Of a stretch of 64,000 nucleotides of DNA, positions 2,105 through 55,984 are shown one piece after another. Position 1 is the stretch's first letter. Each line of letters starts with the position of its first letter. Source of the stretch: Paragordius varius (taxonomy: Eukaryota; Animalia; Nematomorpha); the NCBI GenBank assembly GCA_964247055.1, contig OZ176060.1, forward strand, positions 434,001-498,000. The letters are read 5' to 3'. Both the position numbers and the translations under genes were made by a program. Under the pieces are notes generated by a model, which did no database searches, had not been told where the DNA came from, and was given only the letters and a program-made list of their open reading frames with translations.

Positions 2105-5100
2105 TATATATTGGTAACACATTCAGTAATATATTAATTGTAAACAAATAGCTTTTAGGAGAAAAATTAAGGTTTTAAAAAAGTATGGTTGTCTAGAAAA
2201 AAATATTTGTCTTTATATTTTTACCTTTGTCCGTTTAGTTTTAGTTTTTAGTGTATATCATAGTGCTTTTGGCCTTCACGATTAATTTAATATATTTACA
2301 CTTTTATTGTAATCGTTTAATATCAGAGTATGCGCCCATATGTTAATAAAATTTTTTTATAAAGGTAAACGCTATATATTAAAAAATATCAGTAAATTAT
2401 GTCATGAACTACGTATAAGCAAAACAGTCTTTTCCAAACATTTTAAATTTTGGATGAAGGCCTCGAAAGTCACATTTTCTCCTTAAAATCGGATAGATCG
2501 CTTAAAATAAAAAATTTCTGAGCTGATAGATACGTTTAACATTATCGAATTTGATATATATCATTTTTTTGTTATGATTAAATTTATTTTTACTATTGAC
2601 ATTATTCATATATAATTTTTTCATGAACTGTTGACTTTCTTTATGAGAAAATTCTTTTTAACAAATTAAATATGGATATTTGCGTAGTAATAAAGGAATT
2701 TGTTCTCCTACAAAATCATTCATCAACAGGTTTTCGTTGGATTTAATAATGTCTTGAACTTTACTGTTAGGCCTATTAGATAAAGTTGAGAATTTATTTA
2801 AAGAGGTTATGAATCATCAGAAATAAAATCATCAATTCAAATCAAATAATTAAAAAACGATAAAATATCTATTTTTGATCAAATTTAATGAAGCAAGGAA
2901 AATTAATAAACCATTTAGCGTTTGTTTAATTATTAGCAGTACCGTATATTTATTGCATTAAATAAATGGCATATTTTCATAGTATCATTTAAGTTACTTC
3001 AAGGCTCTTGGAATACACTTAACTTACTAATAATTCAATAAATATTTATTCTTTATAAGAAGTAATAGGCACTTCTTCACTTTTATGAAGGTAATATATA
3101 TTTATAATTATCAATTATATAAAATAACACCCTTTCCTATAAAGCTGTTAAAGTCACCTAGATATTTTGCCTATAAATAACTATATCTTTAAAATCTCCA
3201 AATTTTTAATTATAAACACACAACCCATCTAGGATATTAGCGACTATGTCCCTCAGTAAGTTATGTGTATCAATAAAAATTTATTCTCCCTTTTAGGATC
3301 AAGTAATTATATATAAAAAGGTGCATATACATAAAAACCGAAATTACACACACAAAACGTTAAAATTTAAAGACAAATATTTTTTTTTTATGAGACTACC
3401 ATACTTTTTCAAACCTTCATTTTTCTCATATAAATTATATAATTACAATTATAAAATATATAATTCATTCTATAATATGCAATTTTAAAACGATGAGTTA
3501 TATTTACAAAAATGAAGTATGGTTGTTTTTTACAAAAAATTTGTTTATATTACGTTTTGTCCGTATAATTTTAGCTAATACTGTACATATATAGGTATAC
3601 AATTATTACTTTTTCATTTGAAAAATTGTACGGGCAAACAGTAAACATATAAAGACAAATATATTTTTTTTAAACGACAAACATACTTTTTTAAATTTAA
3701 ACATTTTGAATCTTTATCGTTTTTGGTATAAGGAAGTAAAACACACTATTATATAAATTATAACGACAATTTATTGGGGAAAAATCAATGTTTGAAAGAA
3801 TATGGTTGTCTTTTAAAAAAAATATGGTTGTTTTATGTTTTTACATTTTATCCGTATATTTTCAATCTTTAAAGTAAGAAACATTTTAAACGAAATTGTA
3901 TATCGTTTTACCGTATAAATGTTAGATTGGTTGATTTCCATACATGTTACAAAAATCAAAGTTTTATAAATATACATATTGGGTACTATGAGGAGCTAAA
4001 TGATCAAAAATTTATAAGAAATTGATACCAATTTATATCTGCTCGCTTAAGTTGCAATCAAAACATAACTTGTACACGAAAAGAAGTGTTAAAATTTTGT
4101 CTCTTACTAAAACCGTATAAAATGATTAACATTTTAACTATCCTTTTATTAACCTTAAACCAAACCATGACTAAAAACAACAACAGTGGCATAAAATAAA
4201 AAAGTAAAAAAAAGGCCATATAAAGACAAATATGTAAATTATATAACTACAATCATTAATATACAGTTGAATGTTTCACCAATATTTCATACACTAAATT
4301 TAAACAACATGGTTATTTACTCATTGTAGTGCATTAGAAAACAGTTTATTGCGAAATTAATATTATTAAAAAAAGGTTGTAATAATAAACGTTAACCATC
4401 AAATATAAAAAATGTGCAATTGAGGGGTAAAGTGTTTTATAGGAGGCCATTTTACTTTAAAACAAATGTTAATTTTGTTATAAAAAACATGGTGGCGAAA
4501 AAGTTTGAGATCAAGGTGTCTTTAGAATTTTACATTTTTACAAATTTAAAGAGTGTATATATTTAAATTTAGCCCAGTATTATATATATCTGAGGGATAC
4601 AAAACTACCTCAATAATTAGTAATAAATAACAGATATATTATTCACTTTTTTTAAATAGGAGGGCATTTTACTTATTTAATGAAAACGGAATTATTCCAT
4701 TTTTATGATAATTTATTTTTTTATCGAAATAAAAATTAAAGTATTTTGCGATCAAACCGGTGAAAGATTTCACCAAACCTTAGTGTTTTAAAAAATAATT
4801 TAATTTTAAACAAAATTCATCAAAAATATATTATAAAATGTATAAATAAGCTAAAGAAAAAAATATTTTCTTATTTTGTCTCTATGTGTTTTTATTGGTG
4901 CCCTATTTGATTTTTTACAGAAAAATAACCAGGAAATAATGTGCGCCGTCTACTTTATAAAACAAAGCCATTTTATGCACAGTAGCGTATGATATAAAAC
5001 AAATTTTGTCTATAAAGTAAACAAATTTAATGTTCAAATTATAGGAAAATGCATATTTCACACCGTATGTTGTTTTCAACTCCGACATTACTATATTGTA

Positions 5101-9870: not shown

Positions 9871-10336
9871 TTGTCGAATTTGAGAATTAGATCAAAGCAA
9901 GTAATCAACGCTTATTCCTTTTCAGGTTAATGAATTTTATTACATCAAATATTTATATTTATATGCAATTTGCGCAAAAAGTTAGTTTTATGGTTTTATG
10001 ATGATGGTTTTTAAAAGTATTTTTTTATCAAATATAAACACATACGTAGGATTATAAAAATTAAAGGAATAAGCCATCTACTTATTAGTTTATATCATAA
10101 TCAAGTCGTTGTTTCTCCAACATAAGCTAGCTTCTTCCAAATTCTCTAGCGAGAAATAACTTGCGATCAAGACAGTCGTCTATGGTCATCGATTGAGTTA
10201 AGTTTAAGTCATGACTGATATTTTCCCAATCACATAATAATTGCATTGCCGTTTGGATGACAGAAAATCTATTTTTTTTAATTTCCAACCAACCATTTGA
10301 GCGTTCAATATGGCCCCTATACCTGAGACGTAATTA

Positions 10337-10646
10337 CAGTAAAAATTTAAATTATACGGGAAAAACGTGATAAAGACAAATATTTTTTTTTAAAAATACA
10401 ACCAATCTCATACTTTTTAAAACCTTAATTTTTATCACATATAAGCTATTTAGCGTTATAACTCTAAAATATAGAATTGATTGTATTAGTAATATATATC
10501 TCTATTTCACTTACTTTGCCATTTAAAAAAATGAGTTATATTGACATAAATTATCAACATTTAAAAAGGTATGGGGTTGTCTTTTAGGGAAAAAATGTTT
10601 GTCTTTATACTTTTACGTTTTGTCCGCATGATTTCAGTTTTTATTG
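10337..10646. mobile_element. MITE family A copy
   Basis: TA|CAGTAAAAATTTAAATTATACGG ... CCGCATGATTTCAGTTTTTATTG. Inverted arms with a heterologous spacer. Confidence 0.8.
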
Positions 10647-10654
10647 TTGGGCCT

Positions 10655-12238
10655 GGGGAAGTTACAAGGGAGAAGAAAGTAAAAATATTAATATATGTAT
10701 AAAAGATAAAATAAATAAAAAATAAAATATATATATATATAAAATATTACAATGATGCATTCGTTGGGTTGTTGTCTGTGAGGGAATTTTGACCGCTCAT
10801 AAACATGTGGTACATATCGGATGAGGATTTTATTGTATTGGTAACTATTGATTTCTTAAGTTGGGTAGGGCATCGGAACCTGATCTTCTCAAAAAGAACA
10901 TCGTTTTTCGAATACCAGGAACCGAAACTCCCTACGACAATGGAAATGACTTGGGTGTTGCTGTATGTTTCCTGTAAGTGTTGAGCCATACAGCTATACT
11001 TCATTATTTTATTGTTGAATGCCGTTTCGAACGATTCTAGCCTGTTTCCAAACGGCACTGTGGGATCAATGATAAAGCAATCAGTGCCATTTGTTACAAT
11101 GAGGTCAGGGCGTAGTCTCGACGAATCGATGGCTTGATTTTCACTTAAGATCTTGAATTTTGATGGGAGGTTGTCTTTAATCAGGTCCACTATGATGTTG
11201 TGTCTTTTGGTTATTACATTATCATCTTTGAGGCAATGGTTTAAAACATGTGCTTGGGTTTCTTTAGATTTGCCGCAACGACGGCACATTTGTTCAGACG
11301 TCCTGAGACGCGCATTTTCGTTGGTAGGAGATTGAGACGCGCTTGATGGATGAAATTCCAGTCTTTAAAACGAAGATCCTTATTATTGTATAGGAAGTGG
11401 TGACTGACCTTATCATCAGCAACGCACTCCATCACCAGACACCCTGCAAAGCAAAATGATGTAGCTCAGTATTCATTAATTTTCGTTTATAAAATTGAAG
11501 GTTAGAAACAACAGCTAAGCGATTGTCTTGGGAGATTTTAGAGAGCTCTGAAATTATTGTAGGCTGAAAACAATCATCAAAAGACCAAAAAATTTGATTC
11601 AGACGCCATTCTCACTATTGTTTAAATGTTTTGGTATTTATTAGCTGGATTTGAGACAAGAGGTTTCTCATAACCAGATAAATACTTGCCTAATTGATCG
11701 GGAGTTATAGAATCTAATCGAACCTTACAACGAAAGCTAGCCGAAAAGTTCCTCGAGAGCAGAAACTCTTATAGAAAGATCTAAGCTAGTAAGTAATTTA
11801 AAAGCGGAATCCACACGAAATATATTAATGTCATCTGGGAATAGGGGCATCCCTAAGGCGCCCTTATTACGAGAGCCAAAAATATAATTGTTAGTGGCAT
11901 CTCTTGGAAGATTTAATATTTGTTTGAACACTTTAGTTAGTTTTTTATCTAGATATTCACCTGTAACCATTTTAAGCTCATTATTTCTCAACTGGTGAGA
12001 AATAGTGGGATAGAAAAAAGTTTTAATAGCGTCTAGCTTTTGCCAAGGGAGGAGGCTAGAACTATGAATTATCCACAATTTCCGTAGAAGGAACGGGATT
12101 TTAAGGAACTTGAGACCTACAAGCTTTCCAAGAAATTTAACAAACTCACCTTGACAGATTGAGGGAACAACAACTTCACCAATCTTAAAAACAGGACTAC
12201 AAGAAGCAATAGAAATACTATTGCACAAGGGTCAATGG
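10655..12238 (-). mobile_element. 5'-truncated, frameshifted NeSL/Utopia-like non-LTR retrotransposon (RT C-terminus, CCHC knuckle, RLE)
   Basis: KFLGK and SLLPWQKLDAIKTFFYP (end of RT and thumb); LRFKDWNFIHQARLNLLP; CRRCGKSKETQAHVLNHC; RHN; RPDLIV..IIDPTVPF..KIMKY..VGSFGSW. Stop at 10747 then an AT-rich 3' UTR shared with 53499-53593. Confidence 0.92.
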
Positions 12239-12599
12239 TTTGCCAAAAATTAAAAATAGTTTGTTGAAGAAAAAAGTCTTGACCAACGATGATAAAATCA
12301 GGACTTACTAACATTTGTATTTAATTAATGGCTTTATATAACATATTATTTTTTATAATTCAAAAGCGAAACTACTCCGATAATTAAGCATATTAATATA
12401 ATAAATATCTTGGTATATAAAATAAAATTAAAAAATTATATATATTGTAATTTACTTGCCATCTATTTATATAATTGGATAAAATCATCTGTTAACATGG
12501 ATAAATATATTAATTTTAAAATTTTCCGTTTTTTGATATTAAGCAGCCAACAAAAGCGAGAACTTAAGCGCTTTGATTGCAGGAAATATATTAATTAAT

Positions 12600-13450
12600 T
12601 GTTAATCAATTACAAACTATAGTAAAATTGAATTATATATACAAAACGTAGGATATTTTTTTTGAAAAAGACAATCAAATTTTTTATTTTCAATTTCGAT
12701 ATTTTTAATTGTAAATACATAATTCATTGCATTACCAATTTCTTATCTATTTCAAACTTTGCAATTTGATAAGAAGTTATATTTTAAAATCAGGTTTAAT
12801 AAAGTACAGCGGGCTAATAAAATACATTTTACACTTTCACGTTTTGCCCTTATAATTTCAATTTTATATGAGATATTATTATGGGTTAGATTATATCTTG
12901 ATATATATCATTTTTATTTCTCATATATTGTTTCTATGTTTTCGTTTATATATAATAAACTTTTAGTTATAGTATGAATTTTATAATAGTAAATCATTTC
13001 CTATGCAATTTAGTTAAATTTTTATATTTCATGCTATCTTATCTAAAATAATACCTATATCACCAAAAAATTTTTAAATTATTTTAATCTCATTTTTAAT
13101 TTGTAATTAAATATTTTATAGTAAAAAGATTAAAACGTAATCGACAAGATTTAAGCTGATAATTATTTACATTGAAAAAGCGTGGCACACCGATTAAATT
13201 ATAAAGCCTATTTGTTATATAGATAGAAATACTTAAAGTATATACAATACCCATTAGATTGTTGGCCACTTCACATTATTTTAGGCCATTTGGCATTACA
13301 GTAACGTGTGATAAAAAACAAACGGTGTGAAATAAACATTTTTCTATTTTTATTACATTAAAATTGTTTATTAATTCAGGGAAAAGATTTGTTTTATATC
13401 ATACGTTAATGTGCTATTTGGTCAACAATAAAATGATTATAGAGTAAAAA
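12600..13450 (-). repeat. Dispersed ~1-kb repeat (family B-associated), inverted relative to 17550-18400 and 46930-47520
   Basis: Shared blocks such as AACAAATAGGCTCTACGGTTTAATC and AAACATAGGAATAAGAAATATTAAAAATGA (reverse complement here). Further copies near 5100-5500, 27640-27950, 28375-28800, 43390-43500 and 43860-44000. Confidence 0.75.
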
Positions 13451-15948: not shown

Positions 15949-16202
15949 CAGTAAAAATTAAAATTATACGGAGAAAACGTAAATATATAAAGACAAATAT
16001 CAAAATATCTCTAATTCTAACTTGGCAATTCTAAACCGTGATTTTCAAGTAAAAAATCAAGATTTTAAAAGTATGTGGTAACACAATCTATTATATATTT
16101 TACAACTGGAAAATAATTAATGCTAAAAAAAGTATAGTAATCTTTAATAAAAAATATTTGTCTTTATATTTTTACGTTTTGCCCGCGTATCAATTTTTAC
16201 TG
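15949..16202. mobile_element. MITE family A copy
   Basis: TA|CAGTAAAAATTAAAATTATACGG ... CAATTTTTACTG. Confidence 0.8.
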
Positions 16203-19200
16203 TCTTAAGAATAAATTTTATTTTATTTTTTAGTAAGTTTAATTACAGTTCATATGCAAAGTTAATCATTAATAATCAATTTAACTTGATTTTAAACATT
16301 TTTTGATCTATATCTTTTCGTCTCGTCATTTATATATTTTTTATAAAAAAATAAAACATACATTTTAGATTTCGGCGACTCAACTTACAAACTTTGGTGT
16401 GATCTTGATACTAAGCTTTATAAAGTAGAACTAAAAAATCAACAAGAAACGTATATTGATGATCCATCTAAACCGGCCTCATTTCTTAATTTGTTGGAAA
16501 ATGAAGATTTTACAAATGATGATTTACGGACAATTCTGAACGCTTCTTTCCATAACCTTTGTTATTTAAGAGAACATAAAAGCGAAAATATCTTACAAAA
16601 TAATAATTTAGACTATGAAAATAAAAATTATACCAAAACCAACAAAGATACCCTAATTAGTGATTTGGTAGGAGAACAGACAGAACCTTTAGATCTTTCG
16701 CTGAAAAAACCTCCAAAAAGTATAAAAAAAATTACTCCGGTGTGCGACAGTAGTGATTCCAATGATATAAGCATGAATGATATGAACAAGCTATTTGATG
16801 ATAACAATAATAATCGAAAACCTAATGAGTCCCTATACACTCATTTGGAGAATTGTTATCGATGTATTCAATGTGATAAAATTTATAAGGACCAACATGT
16901 TTTAGCCAGACATATTCGTTCTGTTCATGAACAAGCTAAATATCCGTGCAAAATTTGCAAAAATATTTTCTAAAGGTAATCTCGCTAGGCACATTAAGTC
17001 GGTTCATGAAAAAATTAAACATTGTCTGATTTGTAAAATTAATATTTCTCAAAAAGGCAATCCTGCAACACATATTCAATCTGTTCGTGAACAATTAAAA
17101 CATTTATGTCCCATTTGTAAATACGAGTTTTCACAGAGAGAAAGTCTTGGAAGGCACAAATCTGTTCATAACAAATTAAAAATGAATGTTCAATTTGTGA
17201 AAAGAAATAACCCGAAAAAGTATATCTTGCAAAACACATTGAATCTGTTTATAAATTAAACATCATTGCAAGGTTTATTGCCAATTAGACTAATAAACGC
17301 ACTCTTACCAGGCATATTAAAATATAAATTCTCATTTGTAAAGATTATCCAAATTTAATACATCAAAATTTTACATAATAATTTAGTTTTAGTTTTATCA
17401 TTCTTGTAAATAAAATATATTGAAATTCATTTATTTCATTGAGTCACTTGCAAAATTGATTCAATTTTATTTAAACGGATAAAATACTAGGCATGTTATT
17501 TAACCGGTCAGTAATATTTTCTGTAGATAGGCATTAAAAACATTACACACTTGGTTGGCCAATTAGCAATACAGTATAGCAAACATATAAAACAATTTTT
17601 GTTATAATAATAAATAAATTTAAAATATTTAAAATAATTAAAAATAAAGTAAAATATAATAGGATAAAAATATACTATTTTCGGTATTTCTTGTAAAGTT
17701 ACTAATTTAAATTATTTTTAATTAAAATTACATAAAGCAAATAAATAAGTTTAATGTTGTAATTATAGGAAAAACCTTTATTTCACACCGTTTGTGTACT
17801 CACACCTTACTGTATTGCCAATTGGCTAAAAATAATGTAAAGTGGGCGACAATAAATTGGGTACTGTATATGCTCTAAGTTTATTTATATAATAAATAGG
17901 CTCTACGGTTTAATCAGTCTGGCCAGCTTTTTCAATCTAAATAATTGTCAGCTTAAACTTTTCAGCCTCTTACGTATAGTTGTTTGAAAATCGCCGACTA
18001 AGAAATTAAACTTTTAAAAAATATTTGCATAAAAATCCTAAGATTAAATAAATAATTAAAAAATTTGGCGATATAGGATATAGTTCAGTAAAAGTGAACA
18101 TCTAAATATAAATACAAAGTTGTATATAAAATAATTTTCGCTTTATTGATTCTTCAATAATAGTATAAGGTCTATTTTTGATAGATTAAACATAGGAATA
18201 AGAAATATTAAAAATGAAATATACCCATATATTCAAACTACAATAATATTTCATATACATTTGAAATTCGGACAAAATTAAAATGTTAAAACAAACTTTT
18301 TCTAAAAGAGTGTTTTTCTTTATGAATCAAATTTAAATTTGAAATAGACATATGAATGATTAATTATGCAGATAGAAGTAGGATATTTATAAGAATTTGT
18401 TTTTTCGTTTTTTCTGTAAAATTTATAGTTTAATAAATATATCAATTATATTGAATAAGCTATCAACATATACAAAATATTGTTAGTGTTTACAAATTTA
18501 AAATCTTTTGTAATGATTAAATTTGAGATTACCTAATATTATTTTAAGATTTATTAAGACTAACGTGTATATTATATTATATATATAATATACTTATAAT
18601 ACGGACAAAACACAAAATATGAAACAACTATTTTTTTAAAACTTTGTCCTTTAAATTGAAAAGTATAAAAAAGAGATTATATTAGACATCAATTATTTAT
18701 TTCACTATTATAATTAAACTTATAATAAAAAACCTGTTAAATGAAAAATAGTATTTTTTAAAAAATTATCCTTATATTTTTACATGTTGGTATAATTTAT
18801 CTGTAAATCGATGGTTTATAAACTATCAAATTTATATTTAAAAAAGTAAATATCATTTAAGTGCATATTACATTTTTATTGGGCGCAAATATATTGTAAA
18901 TAAATTAGAGATTAATTAACTTTGGATATGCTATAAATTGTTATATAATAATGGGTTCTTACGTTTGCTTTTTTTACACCCGTTTTTTCCTGAATTAAAA
19001 TTGCCTAAAATACTGCTAGTAAAAATTTAATATAATTTTAATCACTTTATTATAATAAATTAACAGAATAAGTCTAATTCATTTTATTAATAATTTTTTT
19101 ATTGGATATTTTACATAAGTATTGTTTTAAATTTTATGGCCACTTAAAATTTTACCAAGTTCCGAATTCAAATATGTTCTCTAATATATACTTTGTTTAT

Positions 19201-19203
19201 ATA
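16130..19203 (+). repeat. ~3-kb block (MITE end, zinc-finger gene and downstream repeat) duplicated at about 45790-48350
   Basis: Colinear similarity across the ZF gene and from 17840-19200 to 46925-48350. Confidence 0.8.
16369..17330 (+). pseudogene. C2H2 zinc-finger protein gene with PLDLS motif (copy 1, frameshifted in the finger array)
   Basis: Acceptor TTTTAG at 16368, then an open frame 16371-16973: FGDSTYKLWCDL...EQTEPLDLSLKKPP...CIQCDKIYKDQHVLARHIRSVHE. About 5-6 further decayed fingers of type CxxC..LxRHIxSVHE follow. Confidence 0.85.
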
Positions 19204-29059: not shown

Positions 29060-29560
29060 AGCTGCTCATCTAAATTAATTAATCTGATTTCATAAATAGA
29101 TGGCAAATATATTGAGATGATTTTCCCCTTTGGTAACTGTCAATATTAAGGCATTAATTGAAAATATTTAATATGAGAAAATTGTCGGATTAATATCCCT
29201 CTCGAATTATTAAGGAAATGTCATATAAAAACATAATTAATAAAATTATATGTGAGTGTGCTTTTATCATCGTTTGTGAAGTCCTCCTTTAACAAACTAT
29301 TTTAATTTTTGGCTAACATTACAATTAACATAAAAAAACACTTTTAAAAAGAGGTAAATATTATTGATTGAAAAAGGAAAATGATTAAATATATTGTAAT
29401 TGGTTAATATTAATCATATAAATTTTTAAAAGTCCTCACCCGTACAAGATATGTTTTATAGAAAAAATAAAAACGAAATTAGGAGGTTATATATTTGTTG
29501 TAGTTTTTGTTTTAAACATTTTCAATATTAGGCGCATATTAGTGTTGATTATTTATAATT
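29060..29560 (+). repeat. Family H copy with the unoccupied site TAAAAAAACACTT (29331-29343)
   Basis: The left part matches 44235-44524 and the right part matches the reverse complement of 53300-53409. Confidence 0.8.
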
Positions 29561-42565: not shown

Positions 42566-44521
42566 TATATACTGGAAAATTGAAATTATACATATATATA
42601 CATTCAGGAATTGAAATCATACGGACAAAATGCAAAAATATCAAGGCAATTTTTTTTCAAACGACAACCATACTTTTTTAAACCTTAATTTATCCTATTA
42701 ATAACAATCTTAAAATATATTATAGACTGTCCAATTAACATTTCTATATTATACTTGTAAGTTAAAAACAATGAATTATATAAAATGTCTAGATTAAAAA
42801 AGTATTTTTTTCTTATTAAATAAAGTATTTAAATTTATATTTTCGTTTGTCCGTATAACAATTTTTACTGATATTTCATCAGGTTATTTTATATCCCCGA
42901 TTTTTGACGGAGTGTAATACAAATAATACAAACTATAAGAAATTATACACGATTCTTTATTTACTAATAAATTTAATTTTTAATCCATTAAATATATTTT
43001 TTAGGCAAAATTTTTACTATAGGAAATTGTTCATTTAGAATATATCTATATAGCAAACGTAAGTACCCAATAATATTAAACAATTTATGCTATATTATCA
43101 ATAGTTAACTAATATTCACATTTATTTAAAATATATTTGTGCCTTATAATAACTGTATTATATAGTTACCAAAAGATATTTTTAGCCATCTATTTAAACC
43201 AAAATTAAAACTAATCGGACAAAACAATATAATGACAATTTTTCATAAAAGATAACCATAATTTTTTTAGAATCTATTTTTCCCTATATAAATTAATTGT
43301 GTAACCCATACACAACTCCTATTTCAACTTTGTAATATATAACAATCATGAATTTTCAAATATATTAGGTATCCAAAAGTACATAGTCAACAATAAAGTG
43401 GGTACTGTCTATACTAAGTTTTTCTTTAATTAACAAATAGGCTCTACGGTTTAATCGGGGTTTACGCTTTTTCAATGAAATCAACTGAGGGTTCAACTGC
43501 AGATTGAAAAATAGATTTATTGGTAACACAATCAATTGTGTATTTAACAATTCTAATCATATATACGATAAATTTGATTCTAAATTATATAGTTTGTCTT
43601 TTGAAAAAATTGTCTTTATATGTTCACGTTTTGTCCGTATTCAATTTTTACTGTCCAGTAGTCACTTTATTGATGGCTAATTAGCAATACAGTAGTGTAG
43701 AATATAAAACAAATCTTGTCCATAAATTGATAAACAAAATTAATGTTGTGATATAGGAAAAATATATATTTCACACCGTTTGTTGTTTTTTATTCATATA
43801 TTACTGTAATGCCAACTGGCCAAAAATAATGCGAAGTGGCCAACAATAAAAAGGGTACTGTATATACTCTAAGTTTTCTATCTATATAACAAATAGGCTA
43901 TACGGTTTAATCGCGAGCCACGCTTTTTTATTGTTATCAGTTTGAACCTATCAGCCAATTACGTTTTAATCTTTGAAAGAACGAATCTTAAAATATGTAT
44001 TTGATTGTGTTACCAATATACAGGTCTATATTACGCTTAGTTTAAAACAATTAGTTATATTATGAAGGTTTAGTATGGTTATTTTTCAAAAAAAAATGTT
44101 CTTTTTATATTTTTCGTTTTGTTTCTATTTCAATTTTTATATTTTGACATTGAGAATATATCTCCTGCTAACAAAACTCTTAATTTATTGATTTTGGCTA
44201 AATTTTTATATAAGGAATATTTTAATTAATAATTATTCATGCTAACAAATAAATTTATCCGATTTTATAAATAGATGGCAATATATTGAAATATATCTCT
44301 CTTTGAAGAATGTCAATATTAGACTTAAATTGATAATTTTTAATATGCTTAATTATTGTCTTATTCGTATCGCTCTCGAATTATTTAAAAAAATGTCATA
44401 TAAAAACATTAATTTAATAAAATTGTAATATATTCTGCTTTTATCATCGTTTGTGAAGTCCTCATACTTTAACAAACTATTTCTAATTTTTGGTTAACAT
44501 TACACTTAATATAAAAAAACA

Positions 44522-44553
44522 CTTCGGCCTCTTGGCTAAGATCAAAGTGTCGT
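44522..44553 (+). ncRNA. U2: 5' fragment of U2 snRNA (not a full gene), attached to a retrotransposon 5' end
   Basis: CTTCGGCCTCTTGGCTAAGATCAAAGTGTCGT matches the U2 5' end (CUCGGCCUUUUGGCUAAGAUCAA(A)GUGUAGU). The match stops in the branch-point pairing region. Confidence 0.85.
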
Positions 44554-45715
44554 CCCTTCTTACCTTAAATTCTTAATAAAATTAATTAAACTTGATCTTA
44601 TGCCATCTTTTATACTTTTACAAAATTTAACTATCCTTCTTTAATTCATTGCACTTTCATACCTTTTTTTGTAATTTTTGTGCCTTTTTAAATCTCTCCC
44701 CCCTTTGGTAAAGTTCGCGCCCCTCTTAATTGTTTCTTGTTTACCCCCTTTTTTAAAATTTCGCGCGCCTCTTAATTGTTTTTTGTTTACCCCCTTTTTT
44801 AAAATTTCGCGCTTTTCCTAACCTTTTTCTAACGGCTTTTTGTTTATTTCCCCCCTTTTTTAAATATTCCCTCCCTTTTGCTTTAAATTCGCGCTTTGGC
44901 CATTTTTTTAAACGGTTTTTGTTAACTTTCTCCATTTTTGTTAATTGTTATTTGAAATTCGCGCCTCTCTTTATTATCTTTTATTCGCATGTTGTTTTTA
45001 CTCTTAATTGTGTGTCTCTGAATTCCCGGCCCCCTTTGGCTATATTAATTATCCGGGTGATTAGGACTTTATTTATTTCCATTCTTTAATCCTTTGATCC
45101 ATCTAAATTTCTTTCCAATATTATACATTGTTTATTTTTATTTTAGATATGATATCTACCAACATTATTAGCTCCAACAACATACAAATCATGTCTTCCC
45201 CTTACAATAAGTGATTATGATAATCGACTAGTGTACTGCAAGACAACCTTCTGCCATACCTCTGTCACCACGGTCAATTCTCAAAGCCATCCATCATACT
45301 GCTTCAACCCGTTCACAGCTCCTACATATGAATTGGCTCTTTCTATGAACTCCAATAGCCATCTATCCGTTCATCCCAAATTTATGTCAACGTGCCCTCA
45401 ACTACCAATCAAGCCAAATCTCCCAGCTCAAACATTAAACGCAAGACCATCCTTGATCTTGACCATCCAGCCAGCAAAATGCTTAAGATAAATAATAATG
45501 ATGATGATAATGATGGCGACCTATTGGAGGTGATGCTACATCAACCTACCCTGCAAGACATAACCCTATCTTTTTAATTTTCACGGCCTGACCATTTCAT
45601 ATGTCCGTTTAAATCTTGTAATCCTCAGTTTCGTTGTAAATCCTGGACTGCTCAGAGACAGTCTCTTCTACGTCATATTACGCTGGTCCATAAAGAACTA
45701 ATCAAAATAGTTAAT
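44554..45715 (+). mobile_element. 5' part of a Utopia-like (U2-targeting) non-LTR retrotransposon: 5' UTR and decayed ORF start with a C2H2-like finger
   Basis: Directly follows the U2 fragment. Pyrimidine-rich UTR with ~45-bp repeats, candidate ATG at 45149, and HFICPFKSCNPQFRCKSWTAQRQSLLRHITLVHKE at 45593-45697, resembling NeSL/Utopia N-terminal fingers. Confidence 0.75.
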
Positions 45716-46058
45716 ATTTGCATTTTTAATATTGCAAAGTATTAATTAGATATATCTACCATCGTTATTAAATAGCTTATGGAGGAAAAATTAAGGTTTA
45801 AAAAAGTATGGTTGTCTTTTGGAAAAAATATATGTCTTTTTATTTTTACGTTTTGTCCGTATAATTTCAATTTTTACTGTGTTAAGAATAAATAATTTTT
45901 TAGTGAGTTTAATTACAGGTCATATTTGCAAAGTTAATAATTAATTATATAATCATTAATATTTATGTCTATTAACTTGATTTTAAACCATTTTGTTGGG
46001 CTGTGTAGATTTTTCATCATTTATAAATTATTTTTTATAAATGAAACATATATTTTAG

Positions 46059-46915
46059 ATTTTGGCGACTCGACCTACAAACTTTGGTGTGATCTCTATA
46101 CTAAGCTTTATAAAGTAGAACTCAAAAATCACAAGAAACGTATATTGATCGATATAAACCGGCCTCATTTCTTGATTTATTGGAAAATAAAGATTTCACA
46201 AACGATGATTTACGGATAATTCTGAACGCTTCTTTATATAACCTTTGTTATTTAAGGGAACATAAAAGCGAATATACCTTACAAAATAATAATTCAAATG
46301 ATGAAAACACCGAAACCATCAAAGATACCCTAATAATTAATTTAATAGGAGAACAGACGGAACCTTTAGATCTTTCGCTACAAAAACCACCAAAAACAAA
46401 AAATAATCAATTTCGACCAAATGTGCATTTTTGCAAAAATGAGAGTGATAATAATTTTAATAATGTAAAGCCTGAAAATATGAAAAATCCTATAGAGCCC
46501 GGGAAAAATGTCTGAATGTATGCAATGTAACAAAAAATATAAAGAGCGGGATTAGTTTATCATAATAAATCTGTTCATGAACGAATTAAACGTGTAAGAT
46601 ATGTTGTAAAATGTTTTCCAGAAGCCATCTTGCTAGGCACATATATTCAGTTCATGAGAAAATTAAACATGAATGTCCGATTTGAAAAAAAGAATATACT
46701 CAAAAATGCTATCTTGCAACACATATTCAATCTGTACATGAACAAATAAAACATCCATGTCCCATTTGTAAATACGAGTTTTCACGAAAAGAAAGTCTTG
46801 GAAGGCACATAAAATCTCTTCATGAACAAATTTAAAGTGAATGTCCGATTTGTAATAAGAAATATGCCAAAAAAAACTATCTTGCAAAACACATAAAATC
46901 AATTTTCCAAAAATA
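46059..46915 (+). pseudogene. C2H2 zinc-finger gene with PLDLS motif (copy 2, multiple frameshifts)
   Basis: FGDSTYKLWCDLYTKLYKVELKN; EQTEPLDLSLQKPP; decayed fingers (HPCPICKYEFSRKESLGRHIKSLHE). Confidence 0.85.
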
Positions 46916-48713
46916 TTGCGAGGTATTAACAATAAAGTCGGTACTGTATATATACTCTAATTTTTCATATAACAAATAGGTTCTACGGTAATCGGCATGC
47001 CACGCTTTTTCAATATAATTGTCAGTTTAAACTTTACAGAATATTACGTTTCACTCGTAAAAAAAACCATTAAGCATTAAGAAATAAATAAAATATTTGC
47101 ATAAAAATTCAAAAATAAGATAAATAAAATGATTTATATATTTTTGGCCATATAGGTGTATATAGTTCAGAAAAAGGGAACTTATAAATACAAAAACAAA
47201 GTTGTGTATATAATAATTTTCACAGATTTTTTGATTCTTTAATAATTGTATTAAAGGTGTATTTTTGGTATATTAAACATAGGAATAAGAAATATTAAAA
47301 ATGAAATATATCCATATATAATTCAAACTACAATAATCTCTCATATACATATAAAATTGAGATTATACAGACAAAATTAAAATGTTAAAACAAACTTTTT
47401 AAAAGTGTTTTCCTTAATAAATCAAATTTAAGATTGAAATAGAGACATGTAATATGGTAATTAATCTATTATGTAATTACAATTGAATTAATAATTATAC
47501 AGATAAAAGTAGGATTTTCATAATAAATTGTCTTTTCGTTTTGTCTGTAAAATTTTAAATTTTAATAACTATATCAAATATATTGAATAACCTATCAATC
47601 TCATATACAAAATATTGTTGGTTTTTAAAAATTAAAATCTGTATTGTAATGTTTAAATTATGTGGTCTAATATTATTTTAAGATTTATTAAGACTAACGT
47701 GTAATTTATATTATATATAAAATAATAATAATTGAAAGTATACGGACAAAACACAAAAATAAATATTGTTTTAAAATTTTTCCTTTTAAATTGAAAAGTA
47801 TAAAAAAGAGATGTATATTGGACATCAACTATTTATTTTACAATTATAATTAGATTTAAGATAAAAAACCTGTTAAATAAAAAATAGATGTAATTTTTGA
47901 AAAATTATCCCTATATTTTTACGTGTCGGTATAATTTAACTGTAAATAGATGGCTTATGAACTTTCAAATTTATATTCAAAAAAGTAAAATTTATCAGTA
48001 AAGTGCATATTACATTTTTATTAGCGCAAATATATTTTAAATAAAATTAGTGATTAATTAACTTTGGATATGGTATAAATTGTTTTATATTAATGGGTTC
48101 TTACGTTTGCTTTTTGTACACCCGTTTTTTCATGAATTAAAATTTTTGCCTAAAATACTTCCTGAAAAAATTTAATATAATTTAAATCATTTCATTATTG
48201 TAATAAATTAACACAATAAGTGTAATTTATTTTAGTAATAATATTTTTATTGGTATTTTATATAAGTATCATTTTTTATAATTTTATAGCCACTATTTAT
48301 CATGTTTCGAATAAAGTTCAAATATTTTCTCTAATAAATACTCTATTTATATAATTCAAATGATATAATTTTCAATTTCAGTTAAAATTAAAATTATACC
48401 GACAAGGGGTAATATCATAAAACCATTTATTATTAAAAGACAATGATACTTCAAATTCTATTAAAATAATTTAATTACAATCGTATACTACATACTTGTT
48501 TATATTAATTTACATCTTTATTTCCTACTTTATAATATAAAAGAATGAGTTATCATTATAAAAATAAAATTCAAAAAAAGTATGGCAGTCTTTTAAAAAA
48601 ATAATTGTCTTTTTATTTTTACGTCTCGGTAGTTTCAATTTTTACTGTACTTCTACCGAATAACTCTAATATCAGGGATAATATTTGTTGATAAAATATA
48701 TCAATATTTTTAG

Positions 48714-51929: not shown

Positions 51930-53268
51930 CCATTTCCCAGTCTAAATAAACGTTTTCCCAGTCAATCGAAACATTATCCCAGTCAATCGAAACGTTTTCC
52001 CAGTCAAGAGAAACATTTTCCCAGTCAATAAAAACATTTTCCCAATTAATAAAAACGTTTTCCCAGTCAATAAAATCGGTTTTTATTTTTGATAATAAAT
52101 ATCAAAACAAGATAGAAAAATAACTTTTAACCATTATCAGCGTAATATTAGGATATTATTTTTTATAAAAAAAACAATTATTGAATGAATATTTTCCAAG
52201 TATATTCCAGTGCTCAATCATTAATGACTTATTCTTTAAAAATTATATTTTTGGAATTTGAGATGTTTTTAAGATAATATTTTTTGATTTATTGATAGTT
52301 CGCATTAATATTTGCCGAACGCTTCTTCTAAACTTTTCGAATTTTTTCATATAAATAATGTAGGAAAAAATATTTAAAAAATAAATTTTTTCGATAAAAA
52401 TGTTTTTGATTAAAAAAAATTAATAAAGATATTAGAAAACAGGGGTGTCTAACCAAATGGCTTAGCGGGCCGCATTACTCAAAAAGCACAGCGTTCCGCA
52501 TTTGATATATTTCATTAATAATTTTTCGATTGGATATAAAACTGTAAAATACAAAAATATAACATTTTTTTTAATTTGTTACCAATTTAATAGACTCATT
52601 CAGAATAATTGAATAAGAAGTATGAATATTACTAAGATTTTGTGGGCATATTTTTGCATATAAATTTCCTAATTTTTAGCGGGCCGCATTAAGATACTCG
52701 GAAGGCTAGGCTAGGCCCCCGATGAACCAAATGATAAATATTATATTAGGGTAAAATTTATGTTTAAGATCCAATATGAAGTGCTAAATAATTAAGATAA
52801 AAATAGTATATTATTTTTAAATTATAATATTTCATCCGTAACTATAGATTTTGTAAGTTAGCCGCAAATAATGCCATCAATAAAAAAATATTATCTTCAT
52901 ATTCCAATAATATAACTTTTAAAGAATAAGCCATTAATGATTAAGTATGGAAGATAATTGGAAAATTGTCATTCAATAATTGTGTTTTTAATTAAAAATT
53001 ATCTCCATATATTACGCTGATAATGATCAAAAGTTATATTTATATCTTGTTTTGATATTTATCATTAAAATTAAAACCGTTTCGATAGACTGGGAAAATG
53101 TTTCGATTGACTGGGAAAACGTTTCGATTGACTAGGAAAACGTTTCGATTGACTGGGAAAACGTTTCGATTGACTGGGAAAATGTTTCGATTGACTAGGA
53201 AAACGTTTATTTAGACTGGGAAAATGTTTCGATTGACTAGGAAAACGTTTATTTAGACTGGGAAATGG
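51930..53268. mobile_element. Non-autonomous member of the 21-bp-minisatellite TIR family with a non-transposase core
   Basis: TA|CCATTTCCCAGTCTAAATAAACG ... TTTAGACTGGGAAATGG|TA. About 6 units in the left TIR and 9 in the right. The core matches 1-600. Confidence 0.9.
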
Positions 53269-53408
53269 TATATATTTATTTATAAACAGCAGTGAGTGTA
53301 ACAATGCGTACCTGATATAAATTTTATAATTTATATTATTAATATATTATTTAATCTATTTTCCTTTTTCAATCAATAACATTATTTACCCTCTAAAAAG
53401 TGTTTTTT

Positions 53409-53882
53409 AAGAACAGAAACAGATATAATTTATTAATATATAAAAATACAATTTAGAATATATGAAGAAAAGTGCTGCGCAACAATATTCAGCATGTGGA
53501 AGTTACATAGGAGTAAGGTAGAAAATAATAATACATCTAAATATATAAAACATAAAATAAATATAAAAAAAGAATATTATATATATAAAAATATTACAAT
53601 AATGCATGGGATGTTGGGTTGTTGTATATAAGGGAATTTCGACCGCTCATAAATATGTGATACATATCACAAGATGATTTGATAGTATTGGTAACTATTG
53701 ATTTCTTAAGTTGTGTAGGGTAACGAAACCTGATCTTCTCAAAAAGAACATCGTTTTTCGAATACCAGTAGCCGAGGCTCCCTACAATAACTAGGATGAC
53801 TTGGGTATTGCTAAGGTCAGTCTCTTGTAATTGATGAGCCATACAGCTATACTTCATTATTTTATTGTTGAAAGCCGTTTCG
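53409..53882 (-). mobile_element. 3' end of a Utopia-like retrotransposon (same subfamily as 10655-12238)
   Basis: MKYSCMAHQLQE..VGSLGYWYSKNDVLFEKIRFRYPTQLKKSIVTNTIKSS, highly similar to 10747-11030. The 3' UTR ends AATAAATTATATCTGTTTCTGTTCTTA (minus strand). Confidence 0.85.
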
Positions 53883-55984
53883 TAGAAATACCAAAGCCAT
53901 ATAATTAATTAAACAGATGGCATAAATTTATAATAATATTTCGTATACTTATAGGAGTGAAAATAAAGTAACTGTCTTTAAAAAAGCATTCTTTGCAAGG
54001 TATAAATATTCACCTATTTTTAGTTTTATCAGGTTATTAAGCATAACATTTTTATCCTATGTATATTACTAAACTATTACTAATATGTCTGTTAAAGTCA
54101 CCTCAGAACATAAATTTTTGGCTAAATATAAATATTTTTTATTAGATAAATCATTAAACTATTTTTTTTTTTAAAACAAATTAATAAGACTAACTCAAGT
54201 GAAAACTCGCCTTTGTCGTATATATTACAGAACAAATTTGATTAATCAAATCGACTAACTTTTATTGAATAAAAAGTTTTTATATGTACCATAGGTAGAC
54301 TTGTTTTACTTAAACATATATAATAATTGTTTCAGTTGAATATTATACTTATATATAGTACAGTATATGTTTATTTTGAAATCATTAGCTTGATATAGAA
54401 AATGCATTTTTAACAATAAATTTTTTAATATAAATATTTATCTAAACACGCTATTCTTTAATTTAGAATAGGGTCATAGTTATTCTTTACTAAATATTTT
54501 TTGCTAAATAATTATTTTTATTTACTAAACTAAATCTTTTTATTCGCGTATCAAAAATCCTTAAACTTAAAAATTTGCTGAGAAACACAGTTTAATAAAA
54601 GTGAGTAATTTCGTAAAATAAACATTTATTTTATAAAAGGCAGTTTTATTAGCAAAAATTACAATATTATTACAAAATATGACGCAAACACTTTTATATT
54701 TTGGAATTTTATAATTTAAAATAATTATTTGATTTTTTATTAAAGAAGGATAGACTTTACTCCATATTTTTCTGTCTTTTTTATGTCAATAAATACTTGA
54801 CTGTTGCTTTTCAAAAAGTTGTGATAACATAAATTTAAATGATTCAAAAATGTTATTTATTAAATATAATTTAAAAAAAATTTAATAACCATACTTTATT
54901 ATTCACATGGATAAAAAATTAGTCAATAAATTTAAACTTATATGAATCATAGCTTAAGTTTAGAAAATTTAATGTTATTTGAAGTAAATGAAAAATATCA
55001 AGTTAATATATTTATTAGTTAAAAAAATATATTATTTCATTTTAGATATTTTTAATCCATAAAAAAATTGAAACAAAAATTGAAATATAAAATAAAACGA
55101 CAGACGATTTCATTTCTTAACGGTTTTTTTAATTATCTGCTTTTTTATTTATTTGTAAAATTTACTTTAAAAAATGGGTATTTATAATAATATTTTTATA
55201 AATATATAATATTTAATTGTTTTTAATTTAAATTATTTTTAAATATCAGATTAACTTTAAGTCTTTATCTTATAAATCCTGTAACATATAAGCCATCTTT
55301 TTTATGTTTAGTATTGTTATGAATAATATGTATATAAAGTTATGTAATGTTAACTGAACAATAACAAATTATGGGACTAAAAAAATAAATAGTTTGGTAT
55401 GCTAAAAATAAAATAAAGCAAAATTTGGATTTTTGTAAAATATTTGTTTTAAATGGCAAAATGTGAATTATAAATATATTTATATTCTACAATTGTAATT
55501 AAAGAGCGTATAGAGGAAAAATTAGTGTTCGAAAAAGTCTGTTTGTATTTCTATTTATTTTTATATTAATTTTTTGATTGTATAATAATTTTCTTATTCT
55601 TATTAATTAAAATAACAGTTCGATAAATATCCGATCATAAAGTATTATAAAATAATTAATATTTTTCACACTAATATTCGCGGCATATTATTTAATTTAA
55701 ATAAACATAAGAAAAACAAAAAATATACGATTCCGGATATATAAATATACTATAATGAATGACCTGCGTATAGATCAATGGCGTACCTGACATAAAATTT
55801 TTAAATAAATAATAAACAATTATAATTAATATATTTTTTTTCGTTAATCTATAACACCCATTTACCTTGTATAATTTTTGATATTATTTTAAGTCAATGA
55901 TCAGCAAAATTTAAAAATTATTTAATAAAAAATTTTACTAGCGAAGATTAAAGCAAGCCTACTTTAGAATATGGCTAAATATAA

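What the first reader, a model, noticed from the sequence alone, without database searches (positions are those of the whole stretch)
44235..45715. U2 snRNA fragment plus Utopia-like 5' end inserted outside a U2 gene, in a dispersed repeat
Seen: family H repeat ending TAAAAAAACACTT, then about 30 nt of the U2 5' end, then a retrotransposon-like UTR and an N-terminal zinc finger. Upstream is repeat H, not a U2 promoter. Known: Utopia (RLE) and Keno (Tx1) retrotransposons insert specifically into U2 genes around the GUAGUAUCUG region. Inference: a co-transcript starting in U2 was reverse transcribed to its 5' end and integrated off-target, so the element carried part of its own target site.
Basis: partly seen in the sequence, partly recalled or inferred. 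Interest (0 to 1): 0.8.

Follow-up and report, generated by a model that had tools for sequence, protein, structure and literature searches.

The report
Stray Utopia retrotransposon carrying a U2 head
This is the dead front 1.2 kb of a jumping gene (Utopia type) that normally lives inside U2 splicing-RNA genes; here it landed in an unrelated local repeat and still carries 27 bases of U2 at its front, which suggests it is copied from an RNA that starts at the U2 gene's own start site.

Summary
Window 44524-44550 is an exact 27-nt copy of this genome's own U2 (nt 9-35). It is followed by the 5' UTR and the first 196 codons, now broken, of a retrotransposon with zinc fingers, reverse transcriptase (RT) and a restriction-like endonuclease (RLE). 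Coding-intact copies of this element sit in real U2 genes elsewhere in the genome, with the identical U2 nt 35 | element junction.

The DNA upstream is repeat H, not a U2 promoter. H does not end at the junction. Other H copies read straight through it and hold no U2-like sequence, so the U2 piece arrived with the element.

At the same H site, other copies of this family show:
- 3' junctions carrying short U2 3' pieces, in at least 9 decayed loci;
- two different 5'-truncated 5' junctions.

The window's 5' junction and those 3' junctions overlap by 12-13 bp. A clean stray copy elsewhere has a 13-14 bp target-site duplication.

The best reading is target-primed insertion of a U2-initiated co-transcript into a repeatedly hit secondary site. 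The piece was later cut off at 45722.

The element is a new Utopia family in a new host. The scan had already found Utopia in this genome on other DNA, including one U2-flanked stray copy. The co-transcript inference is modestly new. Interest is moderate.

The parts
44247..44523 (+). Repeat H, left part, interrupted at 44524. This is the 5' flank of the insertion.
   Evidence: It is 82-90% identical to H copies on C11 and C10. Those copies continue uninterrupted past the junction.
44524..44550 (+). U2 snRNA nt 9-35 (27 nt, exact). It may extend to nt 5 with a 2-nt TC gap (from 44521). The 1-4 nt CTT/T overlap with H is ambiguous.
44551..45148 (+). 5' UTR of the family-A Utopia-type element, including a 46-bp tandem repeat at 44699-44812.
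   Evidence: It aligns with U2-inserted copies L014, L011, L012 and L031. Tandem repeat.
45149..45722 (+). Decayed ORF start, codons 1-196 of 1265, with the first C2H2 zinc finger at 45602-45691. Homology to the element stops at 45722.
   Evidence: tblastn gives 64% identity with at least 5 stops and frameshifts. Full ORF. RVT_1 lies at residues 571-811 of the intact ORF.
45741..45950 (+). Very abundant short repeat (provisional name M) that begins about 20 bp after the break. The remaining two-thirds of the element are absent.
   Evidence: 2609 first-look candidates genome-wide, often in inverted pairs.
53409..53882 (-). The last ~440 nt of a family-A copy plus a U2 3' piece (TCTGTT TCTGTTCTT, 53423-53409).
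53268..53408 (-). Repeat H, right part, resuming at AAAAAACACTT. It overlaps the H end at 44512-44523 by 11-13 bp, giving a candidate target-site duplication.
10647..12226 (-). A second family-A piece (reference positions about 3250-4831). It is 5'-truncated and joined upstream to H 26 nt before the 44524-equivalent site (H at 12238-12656).
29072..29414 (+). Uninterrupted H copy in the same window, an 'empty site' around 29331-29343.

Best explanation
Window 44524-45722 is the 5' 1.2 kb of a dead copy of a U2-gene-specific non-LTR retrotransposon of the Utopia kind (N-terminal zinc fingers, RT, C-terminal CCHC and restriction-like endonuclease).

Shown:
- In this genome the family sits in U2 genes between U2 nt 35 and nt 40, which is the published Utopia/Keno site.
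- The inserted U2 genes keep their promoter.
- The window copy has the same U2|element junction but is joined upstream to repeat H.
- H is interrupted at that point, and empty H copies hold no U2 sequence there.

Inferred:
- The template was an RNA started at or near U2 +1 by the U2 promoter and running through the element into downstream U2.
- Target-primed reverse transcription at a nick in H (after CTTAATAT) copied it almost to its 5' end.
- The cDNA end was joined to H through a 1-4 nt microhomology, leaving U2 nt 9/10-35 as a head and a 12-13 bp target duplication.
- H is a secondary site hit several times by this family, perhaps because it carries TTGGCTAA at the same distance upstream of the nick as U2 does.
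- A later rearrangement, next to an abundant short repeat, removed everything after element position about 1190.
For: - Junction: the U2 nt 35 | CGTCC junction is identical in the window and in the U2-gene copies L011, L012, L014 and L031, which have the conserved U2 upstream sequence.
- Insertion site: the 3' junction in U2 genes starts at TCTGTT, which is nt 39 of standard U2 numbering as published for Utopia (PMC4640811).
- Element type: the ORF has zinc fingers, RVT_1 and CCHC+RLE. The closest relatives (40% identity over RT-RLE) in a springtail and a tick are flanked by U2 on both sides.
- Empty sites: H reads through the site in at least 9 copies with no U2-like sequence. The window's H|U2 junction is unique in the genome.
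- Same site, other junctions: the same H site carries family-A 3' junctions with U2 pieces of 0-15 nt in at least 9 loci. It also carries two other 5' junctions, to element positions about 3225 and 4425, within 26 nt of the window's junction.
- Target duplication: the 5' and 3' H flanks overlap by 12-13 bp. The stray copy L039 has a clean 13-14 bp duplication.
- Other U2-headed non-U2 junctions: nt 6 in six old copies and nt 7/8 in family B.
- Analogy: R2 RNAs keep up to 36 nt of upstream 28S, which is proposed to give uniform 5' junctions (PMC3774820). Here the 5' junctions in U2 genes are uniform within each family.
Against: - No RNA evidence exists; co-transcription is inferred from DNA alone.
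- The head starts at nt 9/10, not nt 1.
- The copy lacks its own 3' junction. The matching 3' junction in the window is 8 kb away on the other strand and is more decayed (11.8% against 7.1% from the U2-gene copies), so the target duplication is assembled from two loci, not seen in one.
- The region is heavily reshuffled. Copies that share a 5' junction can differ at the 3' flank, which weakens counts of independent events.
- Trees of the copies are unresolved stars.
Confidence: 0.72

Rival explanations
1. DNA-level rearrangement. A piece of a genuine U2::element locus was joined to H by breakage and end-joining, or by ectopic recombination, with no retrotransposition of a U2-headed RNA.
For: The region is a patchwork of rearranged repeats. 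The copy is cut at 45722 and has no 3' junction of its own. The junction is single-copy.
Against: A random break would not fall within 13-26 nt of the H position where other copies of the same family have their 3' junctions and two different truncated 5' junctions. It would also not give an overlap of the typical target-duplication length. The break in U2 lies within 10 nt of the U2 start in three separate junctions.
Confidence: 0.15
2. Secondary derivative. The window junction arose by deletion or recombination from the older U2-headed copies on C10/C11 (the H' group, U2 from nt 6) and is not a separate insertion.
For: Both are family A, both lie next to H-type repeats, and the divergences are similar.
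Against: The two 5' flanks belong to different H subfamilies and end about 130 bp apart. The window lacks the extra A after the junction that most of that group carry. The tree gives no support for grouping them.
Confidence: 0.08
3. Either the reverse transcriptase switched template onto a mature U2 snRNA (as in L1/U6 chimeras), or H is a mobile element that inserted into a U2 gene already occupied by the element.
For: snRNA-headed chimeric retrocopies are known (PMC4494074). H is a dispersed repeat.
Against: A template switch would join the element to the 3' end or a random internal point of U2, not reproduce the exact genomic U2 nt 35 | element junction. H is not at one of its ends here, since it continues in other copies. 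No U2 promoter or U2 nt 1-8 lies anywhere in the window.
Confidence: 0.03

Closest known systems
Utopia (U2 snRNA gene-targeting RLE non-LTR retrotransposons; Kojima and Jurka 2015, PMC4640811)
   Same: Domain order is zinc fingers, RT, then CCHC and RLE. The 3' flank in U2 genes starts at TCTGTT (standard nt 39). Several families coexist in U2 genes and disrupted U2 genes outnumber intact ones. Occasional insertions lie outside U2, with short U2-like strings such as TCTGTTCTT at the junctions.
   Different: In the paper the U2-like strings at stray insertions are read as residual target preference. Here empty copies of the target show that the strings were imported with the element. A 27-30 nt U2 5' head on stray copies is not described in that paper (no discussion of how Utopia is transcribed).
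R2 (28S rDNA-specific RLE element) co-transcript model (Eickbush et al. 2013, PMC3774820)
   Same: The element depends on the host gene's promoter. The RNA keeps upstream target sequence, which is proposed to guide second-strand priming and give uniform 5' junctions. 5' junctions vary when that homology is missing.
   Different: No HDV-like or other ribozyme was detected in the 5' UTR. Here the U2 start site, only 35 nt upstream, could define the RNA 5' end without any ribozyme. The promoter would be an snRNA-type Pol II promoter, not Pol I.
Keno (Tx1 clade, APE endonuclease), the other U2-specific lineage
   Same: Same insertion site in U2.
   Different: [quoted passage not shown] This element has a C-terminal restriction-like endonuclease.
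L1 5'/3' transduction and snRNA/L1 chimeric retrocopies
   Same: Flanking or foreign RNA sequence is carried to a new locus by retrotransposition.
   Different: The carried sequence here is the element's own target gene on both sides, with the native insertion junctions. It is not a template-switch chimera.

Membership tests
Utopia | Reverse transcriptase of non-LTR type in one long ORF | tested here: met
   RVT_1 with E 6.9e-38 at residues 571-811 of the 1272-codon frame in a U2-inserted copy. The window copy keeps codons 1-196 only.
Utopia | C-terminal zinc finger plus restriction-like (PD..D/ExK) endonuclease, and no APE domain | tested here: met
   A CCHC motif followed by a PD...D...K-type stretch is visible in the translation. 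There is a weak hit to a PD-(D/E)xK nuclease family at residues 1114-1211. Relatives annotated R2-like cover 98% of the RT-to-end region. The test is at motif level only, with no structure.
Utopia | One to three N-terminal zinc fingers | tested here: met
   C2H2 fingers lie in the first ~250 residues. The first one is preserved in the window at 45602-45691.
Utopia | Insertion at the specific U2 site, with the 3' flank starting at standard U2 nt 39 | tested here: met
   The family is met: L011, L012, L014 and L031 have the 3' flank TCTGTTCTTATCAG and the 5' flank ending at U2 nt 35 (paper). The window copy itself is NOT in a U2 gene.
Utopia | RT phylogeny places it inside the Utopia lineage of the NeSL clade | tested here: inconclusive
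   No Repbase reference sequences were on hand. Indirect support: the two closest named relatives examined (springtail, tick) are themselves flanked by U2 on both sides.
R2-type co-transcription with the target gene | Element RNA made as a co-transcript from the host gene's promoter | not testable with these tools
   No RNA data. DNA evidence only: U2 heads starting at nt 6, 7/8 and 9/10 on copies outside U2 genes, and intact U2 promoters upstream of inserted copies.
R2-type co-transcription with the target gene | Self-cleaving ribozyme at the element's 5' end | tested here: not met
   Rfam E-value scans of the 5' UTR of a full copy and of the window found only the U2 fragment. A novel ribozyme is not excluded.
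snRNA/LINE template-switch chimera | snRNA joined at its 3' end or a variable point to a variably truncated element | tested here: not met
   The junction is the fixed genomic U2 nt 35 | element nt 1 junction in all copies.

The most novel reading that the evidence does not exclude
Stray copies act as fossils of the retrotransposition template. They would show two things. First, Utopia is copied from an RNA that begins at the U2 gene's own start site, so the 35 nt of U2 at its 5' end replace the ribozyme-trimmed 28S leader of R2 as the homology that seals the 5' junction. Second, the enzyme reads a short motif (TTGGCTAA, 16-23 bp upstream of the nick) that repeat H happens to share, which makes H a decoy target hit at least three times.
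Probability: 0.3. Interest if true: 0.55.

Novelty: new member of a known kind. Interest (0 to 1): 0.42.

Why it matters
How U2-specific retrotransposons are transcribed, and how they make precise 5' junctions, has not been described in the Utopia paper read here. Stray copies whose empty target sites are available separate 'the target looked like U2' from 'the element brought U2 with it'. Here the second holds at both ends.

That points to U2-promoter co-transcripts as the template. It also points to a usable natural experiment on target recognition, because a secondary site shares only a few bases with U2. The element itself, and stray Utopia copies in general, are already known.

Tried and rejected
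- Rfam at gathering threshold finds nothing in the window. The U2 piece shows only in a local E-value scan.
- H as a decayed U2 pseudogene is rejected. There is no RF00004 hit in five H copies, and local alignment of H to U2 is no better than shuffles.
- H|U2 as part of an amplified composite repeat is rejected for this junction, which is unique. It is true for the other U2-headed group and for the 3' junction.
- One insertion split by a simple inversion (44.5 kb half plus 53.4 kb half) is not supported. No element sequence follows 53882, the two halves differ about two-fold in decay, and the 53.4 kb piece shares its 5' joint with a copy at C11:538k that has another 3' flank.
- Trees of the 5' and 3' parts, built to decide between one event and several, are unresolved stars.
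- The 3' end of the 12.2 kb copy was not recovered; another repeat cuts it at 10647.
- TTGGCTAA as a sufficient target signal is not supported. Other TTGGCTAA sites in the window match U2 better (16-17 of 23) and have no known insertion.
- A fuzzy-regex scan timed out and was replaced by BLAST.

Full report
**What is there**

The genome's canonical U2 gene (two identical copies, 177.7 bits to RF00004) begins ATCGCTTCTCGGCCTCTTGG and has an extra A in CAAAGTGT. Window 44524-44550 reproduces nt 9-35 of it exactly, with both species-specific features. A local Rfam scan sees it as a partial U2 (24.9 bits, E 0.0049). Nothing in the window reaches gathering score.

Directly after U2 nt 35 comes CGTCCCTTCTTACC. 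This is the same junction found in five loci where the U2 piece is preceded by the conserved U2 upstream sequence, that is, in real U2 genes (L011, L012, L014, L031, L030).

**The element**

In those loci about 4.56 kb lie between U2 nt 35 and the resumption of U2 at TCTGTTCTTATCAG. One open frame of 1272 codons encodes N-terminal C2H2 fingers, a reverse transcriptase (RVT_1, E 6.9e-38), a CCHC motif and a PD-(D/E)xK-type nuclease stretch.

Kojima and Jurka (PMC4640811) define Utopia by this architecture and by U2 flanks that restart at nt 39 of standard numbering. That position is the TCTGTT seen here, nt 40 in this U2 because of the extra A.

The closest proteins in the large collection are arthropod ORFs at up to 40% identity across RT to the end. 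The two I examined, from a springtail and a tick, have U2 matches immediately upstream and downstream of the ORF. I file the family as a new Utopia family. A formal RT tree with reference sequences could not be made.

At least three further families (B, C, D) occupy the same U2 site. Only 18 exact copies of the U2 nt 19-35 word exist in 110 Mb, most of them followed by an element.

**The window copy**

Window 44524-45722 aligns with the reference copy from U2 nt 9 through the 5' UTR to codon 196. The UTR includes a 46-bp tandem repeat. The piece differs by 7.1% in substitutions from the U2-gene copies and has at least five stops and frameshifts. Homology ends at 45722. About 20 bp later a very abundant short repeat begins, and the rest of the element is not nearby.

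**The upstream flank**

Window 44247-44523 belongs to repeat H, which is confined to contig C11 and the end of C10. It does not. At least nine other H copies continue with TTAAATAGAGGGTAAATAATG and about 75 more conserved bases. None of these uninterrupted copies has anything like U2 at the site. H as a whole is not U2-derived, and the window has no U2 promoter. The H|U2 joint is unique in the genome.

**Evidence that this is an insertion into H**

- The same H position carries the 3' end of family A in at least nine decayed loci, one of them in this window at 53418 on the minus strand. There the order is element end, then a U2 piece (TCTGTTCTT, duplicated in part in the window), then H resuming at AAAAAACACTT.
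- The H sequence before 44524 ends in AAAAAAACACTT. The two flanks therefore overlap by 12-13 bp.
- A clean 5'-truncated stray copy on C1 has a 13-14 bp target duplication and no U2 pieces.
- Two other junctions join H directly to internal element positions. One is about 3225, at 26 nt before the window's junction point (window 12238). The other is about 4425, at 13 nt before it (L044, L045, L054).

Variable 5' truncation with 5' joints scattered a few bases around one nick site is the signature of repeated target-primed insertion. Random deletions would not start so close to the joint each time. I therefore read H as a secondary site hit at least three times.

Caveat: the region is reshuffled. 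Copies that share a 5' joint can differ at the 3' flank. Trees are unresolved stars. The number of independent events is therefore uncertain.

**The imported U2 pieces**

Empty H copies lack them, so both the 27-nt head and the 3' pieces came in with the element. In crocodilians similar strings at stray Utopia junctions were read as residual target preference. Here that reading is excluded for H.

The 3' pieces vary from 0 to 15 nt among stray copies, as expected if priming starts at different points in a U2 read-through.

Three different non-U2 joints have U2 heads starting at nt 6 (six old copies next to an H-like subfamily), nt 7/8 (family B, nested in another B copy) and nt 9/10 (this window). 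All lie within 10 nt of the U2 start, and none includes U2 upstream sequence.

The simplest explanation is that the template RNA starts at U2 +1 and that the cDNA end is joined by microhomology after losing a few bases. This parallels R2, whose RNA keeps up to 36 nt of 28S that is proposed to give uniform 5' junctions (PMC3774820). Within each family here the 5' junctions in U2 genes are indeed uniform. No ribozyme was found in the 5' UTR. The U2 start site could make one unnecessary. No RNA data were available, so this step is inferred.

**Why H?**

Counting from the 3' flank start, TTGGCTAA occupies positions -23 to -16 in both U2 and H, and 14 of 23 bases agree in register. Only 2.7e-4 of window positions show an in-register run of 8, and 6.8e-4 reach 14 of 23. 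The comparison was made after seeing the motif, and better-matching TTGGCTAA sites without known insertions exist. It stays a hypothesis, at about 0.3.

**Rivals**

- Breakage and rejoining is possible in so scrambled a region, but it does not explain the coincidence with the family's H site or the U2 breakpoints near +1.
- Derivation from the older U2-headed group is contradicted by a different H subfamily in the flank and a joint 130 bp away.
- Template switching onto U2 snRNA is contradicted by the fixed native junction.
- H inserting into a U2 gene is contradicted by H continuing past the site in other copies.

**Relation to earlier notes of this scan**

Other agents had already called Utopia in U2 genes of this genome, and one stray copy with U2 pieces at both ends (C11:~220 kb, my L024). 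I re-examined that copy and agree.

**Verdict**

It is a new family of a known kind in a new host. The mechanistic inference about the template RNA is modest but useful.

Noticed in passing
G000 C3:257-528 kb, C2:11.95-11.99 Mb, C5:12.73-12.79 Mb, and contig ends C4, C6, C8 (L003-L016): U2 genes are clustered, several within 10 kb of contig ends. Most are split by one of at least four element families (A-D) at the same site. Only two canonical intact U2 genes, plus a few variants, were seen.
   Followed up: partly
L038 (C7:4.86 Mb) and L039 (C1:11.51 Mb): Two long stray family-A copies have homologous 3' flanks (CAATCAAA.TATT.AAAC) at the same point. This suggests a second repeat family used as a recurrent secondary site. 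L039 has a clean 13-14 bp target duplication.
   Followed up: partly
L058 (C3:349.0-358.5 kb): A family-B copy headed by U2 nt 7/8-35 abuts an inverted family-B copy, head to head, with a ~110-bp stretch of the inverted copy repeated just before that joint. The origin (nested insertion or rearrangement) is unresolved.
   Followed up: partly
window 45741-45950, 10336-10647 and many other places: A very abundant short repeat (over 2600 first-look candidates genome-wide, often as close inverted pairs, MITE-like) lies next to both breakpoints that cut family-A pieces in this window.
   Followed up: no
window 45786-48353 versus 16112-19203: An old segmental duplication (75-80% identity) within the window. 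The whole window is a mosaic of local repeats shared with C10:3.48-3.60 Mb.
   Followed up: no
window 53883-54100 and C11:538.9-539.2 kb (L055): The 3' 440-nt piece is joined on its 5' side to another local repeat (R). The same joint recurs at C11:538 kb with a different H-type 3' flank and no U2 piece. This could be recombination or re-mobilisation of a truncated copy with 5' transduction.
   Followed up: partly
The Rfam gathering-threshold scan of the whole window returned no family at all. Not examined further.
   Followed up: no
L034 (C4:8.05-8.55 kb): Here U2 nt 1-39 with a normal promoter is followed by a different sequence (family D?) joined after AGTA. That is 4 nt further into U2 than family A.
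   Followed up: no
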